Below are positions 10,156 through 14,592 of a stretch of 64,000 nt of DNA, piece by piece. Source of the DNA: Tetramitus jugosus (lineage: Eukaryota; Protista; Heterolobosea); assembly GCA_937625935.1 (NCBI GenBank), contig OW569352.1:496001-560000 (forward strand), in the 5' to 3' direction. The stretch's first letter is position 1. Every line of letters begins with the position of its first letter. The position numbers and the translations under genes were made by a program. The notes beneath the pieces were generated by a model. It saw nothing but the letters and a program-made list of their open reading frames with translations, made no database searches and was not told the DNA's origin.

Positions 10156-11444
10156 ATGCATGCTTTTACCAAGCAGACAATAGAACAAACCTATTGCCTG
10201 CGGTTGTTTCCCAGACAAGAATCGATCGTGAAAAGTTTGGAAAATGAGAAGTTGAATCCACACTTGCAGTATGTTACAAACTTCTTCAACTTCTTTTTGA
10301 TGAGTGTGGGAGCACCCCATATGTAATAGCGCTCGTATGCGTCATCATGTCAGTTTTTGGGGATGACTCATCCAATTTTTTATGTCAATCTTGTTATTCA
10401 AACAACAGATTAAATTGTAAAGGAACGAAAACTATTGCTTCCATTGTTCAGCACTTGACCATGAAATGGTTAAAGGCATTGCCTGATGGTCACTGTGTTC
10501 GTCTTTACCCTAAAAAGCTAAACTTTAGTTCCGTGGCTCATCAAGGATGGGGCGTATCGGATGGTGATAAGCTCACTATGAGACAGCTGTACATGGATCA
10601 ATGTGACTCGTCCACCACAACATCCCAAGCTCCTCATGTCGTTCAATTAGAGTACGATTTCGTGATCCCTGGCAGCACGAAACACTCGTTTGTAAATCCA
10701 AGCTCCATTTCCAGTTGTACGATGCAACCACAGTTGACAATTACTGCTCCAGCAGCCGTATCCAACAAGAATGAAAGACCCTTATCAACAGTTGGTAATG
10801 CCAAGACAGCAACTTATTCCAACATCCGAACTAATCTCAATGGAACAAGTCATTCGCTCGGACTGTCATCAACTAATGTGCATGACTTATCTCTCCCGAA
10901 CGGTGCAACATCGGATTCTTTTGATCTCGGCTCCTTTCTTTTAAATTCGAACAGTGGATTCGTACATGATGAGCATTTGCTCAATGCCACCAGTCAAAAA
11001 AGTCTTGGTGACAAGCTAATATCTAGCCAACCATTTTCCTTGGGTGAGTTATCGATACCACAGAGTCTGCAGAGTCGAATGTGGTCTCAACCAGATGTGA
11101 ATTCAAAAGGCAACCTGTTTTCAGGCACTATCAGCAACAGTGGTGGTCCTTCACTTGGTGTTAGTCTCGGTAGTATTTTGAATGGCAATGACAGCAATGT
11201 TTTAAAGTTGGATACAATTGATTCTGCTACGAGTTCGGCATTCACATTGACATCATTTGCTGATGCTATCCGTCAACAACCTGAACTCTCGTCGGTTCCA
11301 ATCTCCTCCTCGAGTACTAATGACAGCTTCAGTTTGCCTGGTAGCAGCACCAAGAAGAAGAGGAAGAGAATTACAGACTTTTTCGAACGATCTAATTCCA
11401 GCTCTAACACTAGCCGTACACGCAGTCCCCCGCGGAAAAAGTAG
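10156..11444 (+). CDS. Cramped/TSL-kinase-interacting protein 1 (TKI1)-like domain protein, 2 exons
   Basis: Exon1 10156..10268, intron GTATGT 10269..10408 (CAG), exon2 10409..11444. Spliced product LRLFP...SLENEKLNPHLQLNCKGTKTIASIVQHLTMKW...VRLYP...GW...LEYDF matches the TKI1/Cramped conserved block; C-terminal NLS KKKRKR. An upstream exon is possible. Confidence 0.6.
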
Positions 11445-11657
11445 TACTAACTATTAATTCTATGGTGTTTTCCATAGAATCTGCTAACGTTAATCCGAGT
11501 GGTATTGGTTATGTGACACTCAACAGTGCTACTTTCTTCTGAAGGAGATTTTGAGCTCAAAAGATAATTTATTAGGAAAACCTTAAAAGGACAACTTTCT
11601 ACCGCAGGACGCTTCGTGTATATTACAAGTAGCAGTGGAGAATAGCACGAGTATCCT

Positions 11658-12623
11658 TCACTTATCAGCAACGAGATTAGAGACGATAAGAGCAGCAATC
11701 AGTGCTGCAAACATAATGCCGTTCCAAGAGAATGAAGTGTTTGAAACACAGAGACCGCTCTCTCTCAAGCTAGTAGGATCATGACCAGCTGCATTCCAAC
11801 CAGCTTCGTTTGGTGGATAGATAAACTTCTCATCCAAATCATGGGCATCCGGTCTGAGATGCGAACATGGCACAAATGCCTCATTTCTGAGTGAACTATA
11901 CTTTCCAATGGGTAAATCTCCCTTTGCACACCCGTCGTTCGTCTCAATACCGTTCTCACTCAATATTTGTTCGACTTTCTCGATCCATGGGCGATAAAAA
12001 CTGAGATCCTCTTCGTCGTCCTTGCTCAGTTCAAATGTATCAAACGGATTCGACATCACATTGTTGAACTCCATTAGATTTGTGGAGGAATAGAGATCAT
12101 TTGGGTCATCGATCGAATGATTCACAAACAACCCATTGCCAACATACTCTCGAATCGTTCTATATCGATTCAGATCATAATAACGATACAGGTAAATGGT
12201 AATTTCGCGCCCTTTCATATGGTCAGGCCAATTCTCTCGCAGTAACATACATTTCAGACCAAAGTGATATCCGGCGTCTAAATACTGTTGAACAATGAGA
12301 TTGAATGCCTTTGGTACATCACTCAGTCGAATGGAGAAGTGAATCTTCCAATCGGGTGCTCTGTGATGAGTAATGGCTTGTGCAATCCAGTACTGTCTGG
12401 CCTTCAGGGTAAAGAGACGACACCAACCATTGGAAGCACCCATAAAGTATCCCGTGCCATTCTGTTTGCATGTGATCATTTTGTTCTCTCTCAACAACCA
12501 ATCGTAATCGATCAATTCGAACGGATGGTCCTCTATGCTCTCATCACCTGGATCATTGATCAGCAATGGTGTTCCCTTGGAGGGAGCATTTTCAACGATG
12601 GTAGATTCTTGTGTGGTAGACAT
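11658..12623 (-). CDS. OspF/SpvC-like phosphothreonine lyase-fold protein with C-terminal TM anchor
   Basis: Ordered motifs WKIHFSI..DVPKAF, GLK, GREITIY, WIEKVEQILSENGI, CAKGD, KYSSLRNE; terminal hydrophobic IMFAALIAALIV. Confidence 0.65.
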   Translation of the reverse strand: MSTTQESTIVENAPSKGTPLLINDPGDESIEDHPFELIDYDWLLRENKMITCKQNGTGYFMGASNGWCRLFTLKARQYWIAQAITHHRAPDWKIHFSIRLSDVPKAFNLIVQQYLDAGYHFGLKCMLLRENWPDHMKGREITIYLYRYYDLNRYRTIREYVGNGLFVNHSIDDPNDLYSSTNLMEFNNVMSNPFDTFELSKDDEEDLSFYRPWIEKVEQILSENGIETNDGCAKGDLPIGKYSSLRNEAFVPCSHLRPDAHDLDEKFIYPPNEAGWNAAGHDPTSLRESGLCVSNTSFSWNGIMFAALIAALIVSNLVADK

Positions 12624-12750
12624 TGCTTTATTACTCTGAGTAACAAGTCGTGTTTTGCTTTTTGTTTATTCCGTCAGGTCACTCAGTTCTCAAATTGTGG
12701 AACAAGTCCAACGACTACATCGGAAAGAATTGGATCAAAACAAAGGAAGT

Positions 12751-13296
12751 TTATTCTTCTTTGCTCAAGTGAGCCAATTCACTTGCATTCTGTTCCCAGT
12801 TCTGTCCATCAAACACCTCAATTTTCATCTTGATATTGTGGAAATTATCCAAACATCTCACATTGATGTCATATCCGTCAGGATTGCTTCTAGGAATGTA
12901 GAATGGGCTGATGCCACAAGTCTTGCAAAAGAAGTGCTTTGCAGTGTGTGCTGTACATGAGTCCAAGATAGAAGAAAACAACATGTGTGAGAAGGGACCA
13001 ATAGCGCTCAAAGAAAAAACACCAACAAGCAAACAGCTGACAAACAAAAGCTAAGACATACTTCCAAACGTGTAGCAAGACAAGTGCTCCTGAGAGGACT
13101 CTTTCAAGTCAAAATTTGACTTGGGAACAATGTAGTGCAAAAATCCCTTCTTTGTGCAAATGGAGCAATTGCAATCGAGCACATCGAGTACACTGGGACC
13201 GTTGAACGTTCCTACGACACCTCCACAATGACAGGATACTATATACTTGACCAATGTATCTTGATCGTTTTGTTGCGATGATTGCTCTTGGGACAT
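12751..13296 (-). CDS. GFA/CENP-V family zinc protein, 2 exons
   Basis: Exon1 13296..13062, intron 13061..12951, exon2 12950..12751; SCHCGGV, CNCSIC, YTFGTHTAKHFFCKTCG..PFY.PRSNPDG..INVRCLD, FDGQNWE. Confidence 0.9.
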
Positions 13297-13494
13297 TGTT
13301 GTCGATGTTTTTTGTTGTTCAGGACGTGTTTTGTGAGCAATCAGTTCCAGTTCGAGGGGTATTATTCCTTCAAGAGAAGGAAATAGTTCAAAACTGGGTT
13401 TGAGCTCCCCAACCAAGAGATTCATGACAGAAGAAGATTGACTGATTTTTTTTATTGATACATATCATACAAGTGGAGGATATACAACCTAGGT

Positions 13495-14592
13495 CTAGAA
13501 GCAGCAACAACAACGAGAGTCATAAGGGCCAAAAAAGGCAGCCAATTCATAGTTACCACAGAAGACAGTGTAAAAGATTGTCATGAAGGCACTGATGCCA
13601 ACTGCACCACCCATCCAATATTTCTTGTTCTTCTTCTGCGTTGTTGATCCTTGGATGAGAGGAGTGGTGACTTCAGGTTCCAACACTGGTTCAATGTCAT
13701 CAGTCATGCTCTCCACCAACGGCTGAGTAATCTCCACCAATGGGGCACTATGACTAATCTCTAGGTTGGTTTCAGCTTGCTCTTGCTGTTCCTTAACAAG
13801 CACTTGTTCTTGTTCTGTGCTTTGCTCTGGATTTTTTTCGAATGGATTGTTTCTGAACAATGACAGATATAGCATGATGCAAATAGGATCTAGGTCGTTA
13901 CTAAAGTCAGTTGCTGAGACAATCTTTGGAACTCCCAGTGATTGAGAAGCCACATCAAGACAACTCGTTATTGTATCTTCGGCAGTTCTGTTGGCAGTGT
14001 CAATGCTCACAGAACTACCCAGAGACGACACCAGAGCTGCCAAAGCCTCTCCGCTAGCCCAATCATGATTGAAGTTGCTCACTGATCGATACTTATCCTT
14101 CAGCTTGTGATTAATCCAACTTAATAGATCTATTTCAGCAGTTTCAATCGTGGATGCAGTTCTAATGTGCCTTGATCGCGGTTTTTGCTTGAAGTTCCTT
14201 CGTGCATCACCAGAGATTTGATAATGAAACAGTACGGACCAGATGAGACCAAGAATCATTTTCAAATTTCCATCCACAATGTGCTCAGAGGACACACCCG
14301 TTAGAATCAATCCATCTACTCTACGAAGGTAATTGATTACCAACTGAACATTTGTTAACATTTTTACCCTTATTCTCGCATCCTGTTCTATTGGGTGTTC
14401 GAACTCAACTGAACTATCCTTATAGTACCTCGACAACTCCTGGATCAGGTGAATCAGATGATTACCGTCGGATAGTCCAGTCACAAGATCTTGGATCTCT
14501 GTTTGATATTTCCTTGATAAGAAAGCATTTATGTAGTTGGTGAAGACTCTTTGTTGGATGCAACTCGAGTGGGTATTGTTTGTGCTGTTCAT
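13495..14592 (-). CDS. Tandem calponin-homology (actinin-type actin-binding domain) protein with C-terminal TM
   Basis: IQQRVFTNYIN, LSDGNHLIHLIQEL, IVDGNLKMILGLIWSVLFHYQI (CH1); LLSWIN..VSNFNHDWASGEALAALV..LGVPKIV (CH2); hydrophobic segment near the end, tail CCCCF. Confidence 0.85.
   Translation of the reverse strand: MNSTNNTHSSCIQQRVFTNYINAFLSRKYQTEIQDLVTGLSDGNHLIHLIQELSRYYKDSSVEFEHPIEQDARIRVKMLTNVQLVINYLRRVDGLILTGVSSEHIVDGNLKMILGLIWSVLFHYQISGDARRNFKQKPRSRHIRTASTIETAEIDLLSWINHKLKDKYRSVSNFNHDWASGEALAALVSSLGSSVSIDTANRTAEDTITSCLDVASQSLGVPKIVSATDFSNDLDPICIMLYLSLFRNNPFEKNPEQSTEQEQVLVKEQQEQAETNLEISHSAPLVEITQPLVESMTDDIEPVLEPEVTTPLIQGSTTQKKNKKYWMGGAVGISAFMTIFYTVFCGNYELAAFFGPYDSRCCCCF

What the first reader, a model, noticed from the sequence alone, without database searches (positions are those of the whole stretch)
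11658..12623. Eukaryotic, membrane-anchored homolog of bacterial phosphothreonine lyase effectors (OspF/SpvC/HopAI1)
Seen, in order: WKIHFSIRLSDVPKAF, GLKC, GREITIY, WIEKVEQILSENGI, CAKGDL, KYSSLRNE, then a C-terminal TM. Established (SpvC recalled from memory): DKFHISVLRDMVPQAF, KWKV, GAQFTLY, FIECLESRLSENGV, CPESDV, KYLSYRNE, where K104, H106, K136, Y158 and R213 form the active site that irreversibly beta-eliminates phosphothreonine on MAPKs. Equivalents of these five residues appear intact. The R148 and R220 equivalents are not obvious, so the substrate may differ. Inference: an endogenous protist 'eliminylase' (irreversible kinase off-switch, or dehydroamino-acid former) tethered to a membrane. 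The gene is intronless and flanked by spliced host genes, compatible with HGT or an overlooked eukaryotic branch.
Basis: partly seen in the sequence, partly recalled or inferred. Interest (0 to 1): 0.85.

Follow-up and report, generated by a model that had tools for sequence, protein, structure and literature searches.

The report
Amoeba membrane-anchored phosphothreonine-lyase homolog
A soil amoeba expresses its own membrane-anchored relative of the bacterial virulence enzymes OspF and SpvC, which permanently destroy phosphorylation sites; it belongs to a large, undescribed family in microbial eukaryotes, so the question of whether eukaryotes use this chemistry themselves can now be tested.

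Summary
Window 11658-12623 (-) is an intact, intronless 321-aa ORF. It lies in RNA-library contigs that also carry the neighbour gene with its intron spliced out.

The single sequence only grazes the curated models. A profile of 34 homologs reaches solved SpvC, VirA and OspF (E 3e-6 to 7e-5; hhalign against SpvC 95.6%, E 1e-8). The AlphaFold model (pLDDT 86.8) superposes on them at Z 14-14.7, against unrelated eIF4E at about 7.

The SpvC catalytic residues K104, H106, K136 and Y158, plus D201 and R213, align to invariant K93, H95, K124, Y144, D236 and R246. Not conserved are R148, R220 and the phosphotyrosine-pocket lysines. The family adds its own invariant R139, E140 and a C-terminal YPPN..GWN motif.

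The last 19 residues form a tail-anchor helix. About half of the relatives carry a tail anchor, a CaaX-like end or a Cys-plus-basic tail.

The family has at least 201 clusters at 50% identity. Most appear eukaryotic, with one small bacterial clade.

Best reading: an endogenous, membrane-tethered phospho-Ser/Thr beta-elimination lyase. The activity and substrate are inferred, not shown. No publication describing such eukaryotic homologs was found.

The parts
11658..12623 (-). Whole ORF, 321 aa plus stop; intronless; single copy in the 26.35-Mb assembly
   Evidence: RNA-library contigs cover it without joints
12510..12623 (-). N-terminal residues 1-38: hydrophilic, low model confidence, no signal peptide-like segment
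   Evidence: pLDDT 39-71 over the first 40 residues; sequence
11739..12509 (-). Phosphothreonine-lyase-fold domain, residues 39-295
   Evidence: VIA-align Z 14.7/14.5/14.5 to VirA/SpvC/OspF over model residues 34-293; Foldseek top ten hits are all SpvC/VirA/OspF
12333..12347 (-). KIHFS motif: K93 aligns to SpvC K104 (phosphate binding and carbanion stabilisation); H95 aligns to H106 (general acid)
   Evidence: alignments; invariant; residue roles from PMC4159009
12252..12254 (-). K124, aligned to SpvC K136, the catalytic base
   Evidence: invariant in 34 and in 92 sequences
12192..12212 (-). GREITIY strand: Y144 aligns to SpvC Y158; G138 and T142 are shared with SpvC; R139 and E140 are invariant in this family only (SpvC has A153 and Q154)
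12006..12188 (-). Insert of about 60 residues (146-206) with a predicted beta-hairpin, shared only with the closest relatives (P0002-P0006, P0016)
   Evidence: alignment columns 450-530; strands 156-162 and 165-170
11916..11918 (-). D236, aligned to SpvC D201; invariant
11880..11894 (-). SLRNE motif: R246 aligns to SpvC R213 (phosphate binding); N247 and E248 align to N214 and E215
11793..11819 (-). YPPNEAGWN: family-specific invariant C-terminal motif that SpvC and OspF lack; possibly replaces the SpvC segment carrying R220 (inference)
   Evidence: P270, N272 and N277 invariant; SpvC and OspF have gaps there
11667..11717 (-). C-terminal hydrophobic helix I303-A319, followed by only two residues (D, K): a tail anchor
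   Evidence: Kyte-Doolittle mean 2.51 over 17 residues, 2 residues from the end; model helix 296-320

Best explanation
The ORF encodes an endogenous protein of a soil amoeba. It is a true, distant homolog of the OspF/SpvC/HopAI1 phosphothreonine lyases and of the lyase domains of class III/IV lanthipeptide synthetases.

Shown:
- It is intact, single-copy and present in RNA libraries.
- It has the lyase fold.
- It keeps the base (K124), the acid (H95), the base-tuning Tyr (Y144), and two of the four phosphate ligands (K93, R246).
- It ends in a tail-anchor helix.

Inferred:
- The helix is inserted post-translationally into an endomembrane, which one is unknown, leaving the catalytic domain in the cytosol.
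- There the enzyme removes phosphate from phospho-Ser/Thr of membrane-proximal proteins by beta-elimination. K124 abstracts the alpha-proton. H95 protonates the leaving phosphate. K93, R246 and probably the family-specific R139 and the YPPN..GWN asparagines hold the phosphate.
- The product is dehydroalanine or dehydrobutyrine, which cannot be re-phosphorylated.
- The phosphotyrosine pocket of SpvC is missing, so the substrate is more likely a singly phosphorylated site than the pT-x-pY loop of a MAP kinase.
For: - ORF and motifs.
- Weak single-sequence hits point to the right families only: NCBIfam effector_OspF E 0.0057 and Pfam RamC_N E 0.12.
- The family profile against PDB hits VirA 3.3e-6, SpvC 1.2e-5 and OspF 7.4e-5, with nothing unrelated below E 0.7.
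- hhalign against SpvC gives 95.6% probability and E 1.2e-8.
- AF2 model: pLDDT 86.8, pTM 0.83. The Foldseek top ten are all phosphothreonine lyases.
- VIA-align gives Z 13.6-14.7 (157-178 residues, rmsd 2.9-3.5), then LanKC lyase domains at 8.8-12.6 and the LxmKY chain at 9.6-10.6. The eIF4E background is 6.4-7.5.
- Invariant in 34 unfiltered homologs: K93, H95, K124, G138, R139, E140, T142, Y144, D236, S244, R246, N247, E248. The same holds in 92 sequences.
- All five catalytic equivalents sit on predicted beta-strands in stretches of pLDDT above 90.
- RNA: the neighbour's intron is spliced out and the ORF is covered in four RNA-library runs, one of them oligo-dT. Eleven RNA runs hold the stretch.
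- Membrane tails recur in the family: 38 of 113 have a tail-anchor-like helix, 18 a Cys-plus-basic tail, 3 a CaaX-like end, and 1 a CC end.
- Residue roles are taken from PMC4159009.
Against: - No biochemical data exist for any member.
- The window protein fails the curated thresholds: PF03536 gives no hit, NF052433 scores 16 bits against a cut-off of 250, and RamC_N scores 12 against 27.
- SpvC R148 aligns to D134. R220 has no aligned equivalent. The pY-pocket lysines K134 and K160 are absent.
- The invariant R139 and E140 are foreign to SpvC and could signal different chemistry or a different substrate.
- I could not obtain model coordinates, so clustering of the residues in one pocket is inferred from alignment plus superposition, not measured.
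- About 40% of relatives show no obvious membrane signal.
- Topology and target membrane are untested.
Confidence: 0.6

Rival explanations
1. The fold and an active site are the same, but the job is different. The enzyme acts on a non-protein phospho-substrate at the membrane, such as a phospholipid head group or a small phospho-metabolite. Alternatively it hydrolyses rather than eliminates, using the family-specific R139/E140 pair.
For: R139 and E140 are invariant in the family and absent from SpvC. R148, R220 and the pY-pocket residues that hold the peptide substrate in SpvC are missing. Membrane tethering puts the active site next to lipids. No kinase-docking motif is conserved at the N-terminus.
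Against: All known members of this fold with K/H/K/Y intact (SpvC family, LanL/LanKC) act on peptide-bound pSer or pThr (PMC4159009). Abstracting the alpha-proton from a free amino-acid head group is chemically harder without a cofactor (established chemistry). Many relatives have no membrane signal.
Confidence: 0.2
2. It is a non-catalytic phospho-peptide binder or scaffold: a pseudoenzyme that holds phosphorylated partners at a membrane.
For: Two of the four SpvC phosphate ligands are not conserved. No activity has been shown.
Against: The base, the acid and the tuning Tyr are 100% conserved over at least 92 sequences that are otherwise only 30-45% identical. Pseudoenzymes normally lose such residues.
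Confidence: 0.1
3. It is a RiPP-type dehydratase component. It works with a separate kinase to dehydrate Ser/Thr in a small secreted peptide, as LanL/LanKC and LxmKY do.
For: Fold matches to LanKC lyase domains and to the LxmKY lyase subunit reach Z 9.6-12.6. RamC_N is the only Pfam hit. One probably bacterial relative has a Ser/Thr kinase gene two genes upstream (L020).
Against: There is no kinase, cyclase or precursor-like gene next to it in the window. It is a single-domain protein. A cytosol-facing tail anchor does not suit peptide maturation. SpvC-family matches score higher than LanKC matches by profile and by fold.
Confidence: 0.07
4. It is bacterial contamination or a very recent transfer that is not really part of the amoeba's biology.
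For: All previously characterised relatives are bacterial. The gene has no intron.
Against: It lies at about 507 kb on a contig that runs to at least 560 kb, between eukaryotic genes, and the upstream one is spliced in RNA. GC is 0.434 against 0.417 for the window. A 64%-identical ortholog in another assembly keeps the same downstream neighbour. At least four other eukaryotic contexts carry family members, one of them spliced.
Confidence: 0.03

Closest known systems
OspF / SpvC / VirA / HopAI1 phosphothreonine lyases (Pfam PF03536 VRP3; NCBIfam NF052433), type III effectors of Shigella, Salmonella, Chromobacterium and Pseudomonas
   Same: They share the fold (Z 13.6-14.7, 157-178 residues) and are detectable by profile (E 3e-6 and 1e-8). 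Identical residues stand at K104, H106, K136, G152, T156, Y158, D201, S211, R213, N214 and E215. Both are single-domain proteins of similar core size.
   Different: This gene is an endogenous eukaryotic gene, not an injected effector. It is only 15-21% identical and falls below the curated thresholds. R148, R220 and the pY-pocket lysines K134 and K160 are not conserved. It has extra invariant R139 and E140, a YPPN..GWN motif and a C-terminal tail anchor. No conserved MAPK-docking motif is seen. A very long branch separates the two groups (2.63 changes per column on each side of the root).
Lyase domains of class III/IV lanthipeptide synthetases (LanKC/LanL; Pfam PF25816 RamC_N), e.g. ThurKC, CuvL, SalKC, PneKC, and the LxmKY complex (chain B matched)
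   Same: They share the fold (Z 8.8-12.6 for LanKC lyase domains, 9.6-10.6 for LxmKY chain B). RamC_N is the window protein's only Pfam hit, and 9 of 34 relatives hit it weakly. Like them, this protein lacks the pY pocket (PMC4159009).
   Different: Those domains are fused to, or paired with, a kinase and usually a cyclase, and they act on ribosomal peptides in bacteria. This one stands alone, is membrane-anchored, and is eukaryotic.
BLES03 / C11orf68, the previously proposed eukaryotic phosphothreonine lyase (Khater and Mohanty 2014, PMC4159009)
   Same: Both are eukaryotic proteins proposed on structural grounds to have this fold and activity.
   Different: BLES03 was found by fold only. It lacks the His acid, and that paper states that sequence profiles detect no SpvC- or LanL-like lyase in eukaryotes. 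The present family is found by sequence profile and keeps the full K/H/K/Y set. BLES03 did not appear among the Pfam hits or the top 50 fold matches here.
Bacterial members of this same family (P0025, P0029, P0030, P0033, P0062, probably P0082; MAG G001)
   Same: They are 29-32% identical over about 70% of the query and have the same invariant residues, including YPPN..GWN.
   Different: They lie in bacterial contexts: ferrochelatase/YaeQ, NRPS, two-partner secretion, PBP1, autotransporter. They have no tail anchor. P0025, P0029 and P0030 have a soluble C-terminal extension of about 175 residues with an acidic end; P0082 has a longer one (327 residues); P0033 and P0062 have short tails. Two loci have Fic-domain neighbours.

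Membership tests
OspF/SpvC phosphothreonine lyase family (PF03536 / NF052433) | Scores above the curated family threshold | tested here: not met
   PF03536 gives no hit at E<=10. NF052433 scores 16.4 bits against a cut-off of 250. Only 4 of 34 relatives hit PF03536, and all are below threshold.
OspF/SpvC phosphothreonine lyase family (PF03536 / NF052433) | Characteristic alpha/beta lyase fold | tested here: met
   Z 14.7, 14.5 and 14.5 to 3bo6, 2z8p and 3i0u over 157-178 residues, twice the unrelated background. The Foldseek top ten are all family members.
OspF/SpvC phosphothreonine lyase family (PF03536 / NF052433) | Catalytic K136 (base), H106 (acid), Y158 and K104 | tested here: met
   They align to K124, H95, Y144 and K93, which are invariant in the family. 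Spatial clustering was not measured because no coordinates were available.
OspF/SpvC phosphothreonine lyase family (PF03536 / NF052433) | Phosphate-binding arginines R148, R213 and R220 | tested here: inconclusive
   R213 aligns to R246, which is invariant. R148 aligns to D134. R220 lies beyond the aligned region. Invariant R139 and K/R137 lie in the same loop and might substitute (inference).
OspF/SpvC phosphothreonine lyase family (PF03536 / NF052433) | Phosphotyrosine pocket (K134, K160, F100) for the pT-x-pY loops of MAP kinases | tested here: not met
   K134 falls in a gap and K160 aligns to Y146. Pocket residues are from PMC4159009.
OspF/SpvC phosphothreonine lyase family (PF03536 / NF052433) | [quoted passage not shown] | tested here: not met
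   It is a eukaryotic chromosomal gene with a spliced neighbour and a tail anchor.
OspF/SpvC phosphothreonine lyase family (PF03536 / NF052433) | Beta-elimination of phosphate from pThr (-98 Da) | not testable with these tools
   This needs an enzyme assay.
Class III/IV lanthipeptide synthetase lyase domain (PF25816 RamC_N) | Scores above the Pfam threshold | tested here: not met
   12.3 bits against 27, E 0.12.
Class III/IV lanthipeptide synthetase lyase domain (PF25816 RamC_N) | Fused to, or encoded next to, a Ser/Thr kinase and a LanC-type cyclase | tested here: not met
   It is a single-domain, 321-aa protein. Its neighbours are a GFA-family gene, a Ser-rich protein and a CH-domain protein.
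Tail-anchored membrane proteins | A single hydrophobic helix within about 30 residues of the C-terminus, a very short luminal tail, and no N-terminal signal peptide | tested here: met
   I303-A319 has a mean hydropathy of 2.51 and only two residues follow it. The N-terminus is hydrophilic and disordered. Insertion itself was not tested.
BLES03 / C11orf68 | Sequence or fold match to BLES03 | tested here: not met
   There is no Pfam hit, and it is not among the 50 best fold matches. Weak similarity is not excluded.

The most novel reading that the evidence does not exclude
Microbial eukaryotes across several supergroups have an ancient enzyme of their own that irreversibly erases phospho-Ser/Thr marks by beta-elimination. 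It is usually pinned to membranes by a tail anchor or a lipid. If so, 'eliminylation' is a native eukaryotic signalling or quality-control reaction, and the bacterial effectors OspF and SpvC mimic or share ancestry with a host-type activity. Host-associated bacteria carry a sister clade of the same family.
Probability: 0.45. Interest if true: 0.85.

Novelty: new variant of a known kind. Interest (0 to 1): 0.72.

Why it matters
[quoted passage not shown] A dedicated 2014 survey stated that sequence profiles find no SpvC- or LanL-like lyase in eukaryotes, and it proposed the much more distant BLES03 instead (PMC4159009). Whether eukaryotes make dehydroamino acids in proteins enzymatically has stayed open.

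This family gives a concrete, expressible candidate:
- It keeps the full catalytic tetrad.
- It has at least 201 sequence clusters.
- It comes with built-in membrane targeting.

If it is active, it would be an irreversible 'off switch' for phosphosites at membranes. It would also be a new source of electrophilic dehydroalanine or dehydrobutyrine in eukaryotic proteins, and a new angle on how OspF-type effectors and their hosts are related.

Tried and rejected
- Single-sequence searches led nowhere on their own. phmmer against PDB gave only noise (E 0.8-1.5). Pfam PF03536 searched against the whole genome in six frames found nothing, and its control genomes were silent too, so that blank is uninformative.
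- The ESM Atlas feature search ranked OspF clusters first, but at 0.80 and with recognition below the trusted level. It is a lead only.
- Paralogs: none. The gene is single-copy in the 26.35-Mb assembly.
- Recent transfer or contamination was rejected.
- Direction of the eukaryote-bacteria transfer is not resolved. The quick tree nested the bacterial clade inside eukaryotic rows. A tree holding all 86 non-bacterial rows together is 56.75 log-likelihood units better (p-AU 0.96). The outgroup branch is very long.
- Naming the organism and the taxa of the homologs failed. Accession searches in papers found nothing, an rRNA search of the genome failed technically, and the protein tools give no taxon names. 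The 'heterolobosean amoeba' label comes only from earlier notes of this scan and was not verified here.
- Pocket geometry could not be measured, because model coordinates are not exposed to scripts.
- MAPK docking: the N-terminal K16...L-L-I stretch looks like a D-motif, but it is absent from the 64%-identical ortholog, so I do not claim it.
- The viral-contig scan gave one hit, labelled a giant-virus MAG. Its neighbours (a Cache/TPR/VWA protein and an MscL-like protein) look bacterial, so I draw no viral conclusion.
Full report
**1. What is in the sequence**

The window carries one ORF at 11658..12623 on the minus strand. Its GC content is 0.434 against 0.417 for the window, and the composition profile shows no step around it. 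A six-frame search of the whole 26.35-Mb, 56-contig assembly with the family profile finds only this copy. It lies at about 507 kb on a contig that runs to at least 560 kb.

**2. It is a real, expressed, eukaryotic gene**

- Two Logan contigs encode a 98%-identical protein (P0001). Both lay on the window as two blocks that skip 12951-13061.
- The look-up of sequencing runs lists 11 RNA runs holding the stretch, mostly soil metatranscriptomes.
- I laid four runs on 11000-14000. Three are recorded as RNA, one of them oligo-dT primed; the kind of the fourth is a guess. All four show the same 111-bp skip with GT..AG ends on the minus strand. This is the intron of the upstream GFA-family gene.
- The contigs cover the ORF from about 11536 to 12950 with no joint. 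So the runs contain spliced RNA of this organism or a near relative, and the ORF is intronless.
- These are contigs, so they show neither transcript ends nor expression level. A contig that joins the two genes does not prove one transcript.
- An AATAAA lies about 85 nt after the stop, and the contigs end 20-35 nt beyond it. This is suggestive only.
- A 64%-identical ortholog (P0002) in another assembly keeps the C-terminal end of the same convergent downstream neighbour. That argues for vertical inheritance in this lineage.
- Earlier notes of this scan call the organism a soil heterolobosean amoeba related to Acrasis and Naegleria. I could not verify that.

**3. Homology to phosphothreonine lyases**

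- The single sequence gives only weak hits, but they point to the right families: NCBIfam effector_OspF at E 0.0057 (16 bits against a cut-off of 250) and Pfam RamC_N at E 0.12. phmmer against PDB gives noise.
- The protein has many relatives: 34 in the 90%-clustered collection, and 201 representatives at 50% identity with E<=1e-3, 131 of them at E<=1e-10.
- A profile of the 34 relatives (alignment A1) hits Chromobacterium VirA (3.3e-6), SpvC (1.2e-5 to 6.8e-4 across the deposited wild-type and mutant sequences) and OspF (7.4e-5). The next hit is at E 0.7.
- hhalign of A1 against SpvC taken from plasmid pSLT gives 95.6% probability and E 1.2e-8 over 111 columns.
- Four relatives carry sub-threshold PF03536 hits and nine carry RamC_N hits.

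**4. Fold**

- AlphaFold2 on A1 gives mean pLDDT 86.8 and pTM 0.83. Only residues 1-23 fall below 50.
- Foldseek against PDB ranks SpvC, VirA and OspF chains 1 to 10 (E 2.3e-5 to 1.6e-3). Class III lanthipeptide synthetases follow.
- VIA-align gives Z 14.7 (3bo6, 178 residues, rmsd 3.5), 14.5 (2z8p) and 14.5 (3i0u). LanKC lyase domains score 8.8-12.6, the LxmKY chain 9.6-10.6 and HopA1 9.4-9.6. The unrelated eIF4E plateau is 6.4-7.5.
- The ESM Atlas shape search puts three unannotated metagenomic clusters first (TM 0.50-0.54), followed by OspF and RamC_N clusters.

**5. Active site**

By the HMMER and hhalign alignments, SpvC residues map to the window protein as follows:

| SpvC | Window protein |
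|---|---|
| K104 | K93 |
| H106 | H95 |
| K136 | K124 |
| Y158 | Y144 |
| D201 | D236 |
| R213 | R246 |
| N214, E215 | N247, E248 |

- According to PMC4159009, K136 abstracts the alpha-proton and H106 protonates the leaving phosphate. Y158 keeps K136 deprotonated. K104, R148, R213 and R220 bind the phosphate.
- All the aligned equivalents are invariant in the 34 unfiltered homologs and in a 92-row set. In that larger set, K93, H95, G138, T142, R246, N247, E248, P270 and N272 were partly fixed by my motif filter. K124, Y144, D236, R139, E140 and S244 were not.
- Each catalytic equivalent lies on a predicted beta-strand in stretches of pLDDT above 90.
- Not conserved: R148 aligns to D134, R220 lies outside the alignment, and the phosphotyrosine-pocket lysines are lost (K134 falls in a gap, K160 aligns to Y146).
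- New and invariant: R139, E140, G235 and a C-terminal YPPN..GWN motif that SpvC and OspF lack.
- I could not access model coordinates. That the residues form one pocket is therefore inferred, not measured.

**6. Membrane anchor**

- Residues I303-A319 form a 17-residue hydrophobic stretch with mean hydropathy 2.51. Only D and K follow it, and it is modelled as part of helix 296-320.
- With a hydrophilic N-terminus and no other hydrophobic segment, this is the layout of a tail-anchored protein. The catalytic domain would then face the cytosol. This follows from established knowledge of tail-anchored proteins and was not tested here.
- Among 113 relatives that retain the C-terminal motif, 38 have such a helix within 15 residues of the end, 18 have Cys-plus-polybasic tails, 3 end in CaaX-like boxes, and 1 ends in CC. 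The three closest relatives fall just below my hydropathy threshold.
- One relative is fused to an Arf GTPase domain.
- Membrane targeting by different means is therefore a recurrent, though not universal, trait of the family.

**7. Who has it**

Eukaryotic genomic contexts:

| Protein | Neighbouring genes or features |
|---|---|
| P0004 | cathepsin, SET, oxysterol-binding protein |
| P0005 | RGS |
| P0014 | COX16, APC3, RPN7 |
| P0100 | myotubularin, UCH, SUN; the gene itself is spliced |

Some homologs come from MMETSP and EukProt transcriptomes.

Bacterial genomic contexts:

| Protein | Neighbouring genes |
|---|---|
| P0025 | ferrochelatase, YaeQ, DUF805, Fic |
| P0030 | Fic, aromatic lyase, NRPS |
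| P0033 | Sel1 repeats, two-partner secretion |
| P0062 | PBP1, bacterial alpha-2-macroglobulin |
| 2.2-Mb MAG (G001) | autotransporter on the same contig |

- P0082 is probably bacterial too, with a Ser/Thr kinase gene two genes upstream.
- In the MAG's order, only 1 of 201 genomes has a strong match.
- On a tree rooted with SpvC, OspF and a Microbulbifer homolog, the six bacterial rows form one well-supported clade (SH-aLRT 95), and a very long branch leads to the outgroup.
- The quick search nested that clade among eukaryotic rows. A tree holding all 86 other rows together is better by 56.75 log-likelihood units (p-AU 0.96).
- One inter-domain transfer is therefore enough, and its direction is open. 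Most of the 86 'eukaryotic' rows have no verified context.

**8. Mechanism proposed**

- Shown: an intact fold, the catalytic tetrad, two of the four phosphate ligands, presence in RNA, and a tail-anchor sequence.
- Inferred: a cytosol-facing enzyme on an endomembrane beta-eliminates phosphate from pSer or pThr of nearby proteins. This leaves dehydroalanine or dehydrobutyrine and makes the site permanently unphosphorylatable.
- The missing pY pocket and the unconserved docking region argue against the classical MAPK pT-x-pY substrate.
- R139 and the YPPN..GWN asparagines are my candidates for the missing phosphate ligands.
- I put about 0.95 on true homology and shared fold. I put about 0.6 on phospho-Ser/Thr lyase activity on proteins, and about 0.15 on MAP kinases as the substrate.

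**9. Known or new**

- PMC4159009 (2014) states that SpvC- and LanL-like lyases are exclusive to bacteria and that profile searches fail in eukaryotes.
- Searches for PF03536, VRP3, 'OspF-like', 'SpvC-like', and 'phosphothreonine lyase' combined with protist terms found no description of eukaryotic members.
- Automated Pfam hits on a few members exist, so databases may already tag some of them.
- I class it as a new variant of a known kind: a eukaryotic, mostly membrane-tethered branch of the phosphothreonine-lyase superfamily with its own extra motifs.

**10. Operators' notes**

- Read laying was given 3,001 letters.
- The gene needs no spliced model.
- SpvC and OspF were used only by reference, as natural sequences for alignment.

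Noticed in passing
window 12751-13425 (-), intron 12951-13061: The upstream neighbour is a GFA-family gene (glutathione-dependent formaldehyde-activating / CENP-V-like, PF04828) with one 111-bp GT..AG intron. The intron is spliced out in four RNA-library runs. One RNA contig runs from this gene straight into the lyase ORF across a gap of about 127 bp.
   Followed up: partly
window 13495-14592 (-): The next gene upstream encodes a 365-aa protein that also ends in a hydrophobic segment, followed by a Cys-rich tail (CCCCF). Two tail-anchor-like proteins therefore lie within 3 kb.
   Followed up: no
L006 6773-8959; L011 207-1325: Bacterial members of the family sit next to Fic-domain genes in two independent metagenomic loci. 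These proteins carry a C-terminal extension of about 175 residues with an acidic end, which resembles a secreted effector. This is inference only.
   Followed up: no
L020 265-2358 and 3607-5268: A 553-aa family member (P0082), probably bacterial, has a 697-aa Ser/Thr protein kinase gene two genes upstream on the same strand. A kinase plus a lyase is the logic of LanL-type dehydration.
   Followed up: no
P0060 residues 318-461; P0063 residues 282-394: One relative is fused to an Arf-family GTPase domain (E 5.5e-45) and another to DUF1810 (E 1.4e-19). Whether these are true fusions or merged gene models was not checked.
   Followed up: no
L025 3866-4708: A contig labelled as a giant-virus MAG (GC about 30%) encodes a 280-aa relative, 32% identical over residues 54-282. 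Its neighbours (a Cache/TPR/VWA protein and an MscL-like protein) look bacterial, so the viral label is doubtful.
   Followed up: partly
L015 205-1545: In the same bacterial order as MAG G001, a 446-aa protein next to a DDE transposase carries a GDWKIHFSIHPED stretch. It matches only the first half of the family profile (hhalign 96.7%, E 4e-10). It may be a divergent or chimeric relative.
   Followed up: partly
P0059, P0067, P0103, P0151, P0154, P0168 C-termini: Several relatives end in CaaX-like or CC/CCC boxes, where others have a tail-anchor helix. Different membrane anchors appear to be interchangeable within one enzyme family.
   Followed up: partly
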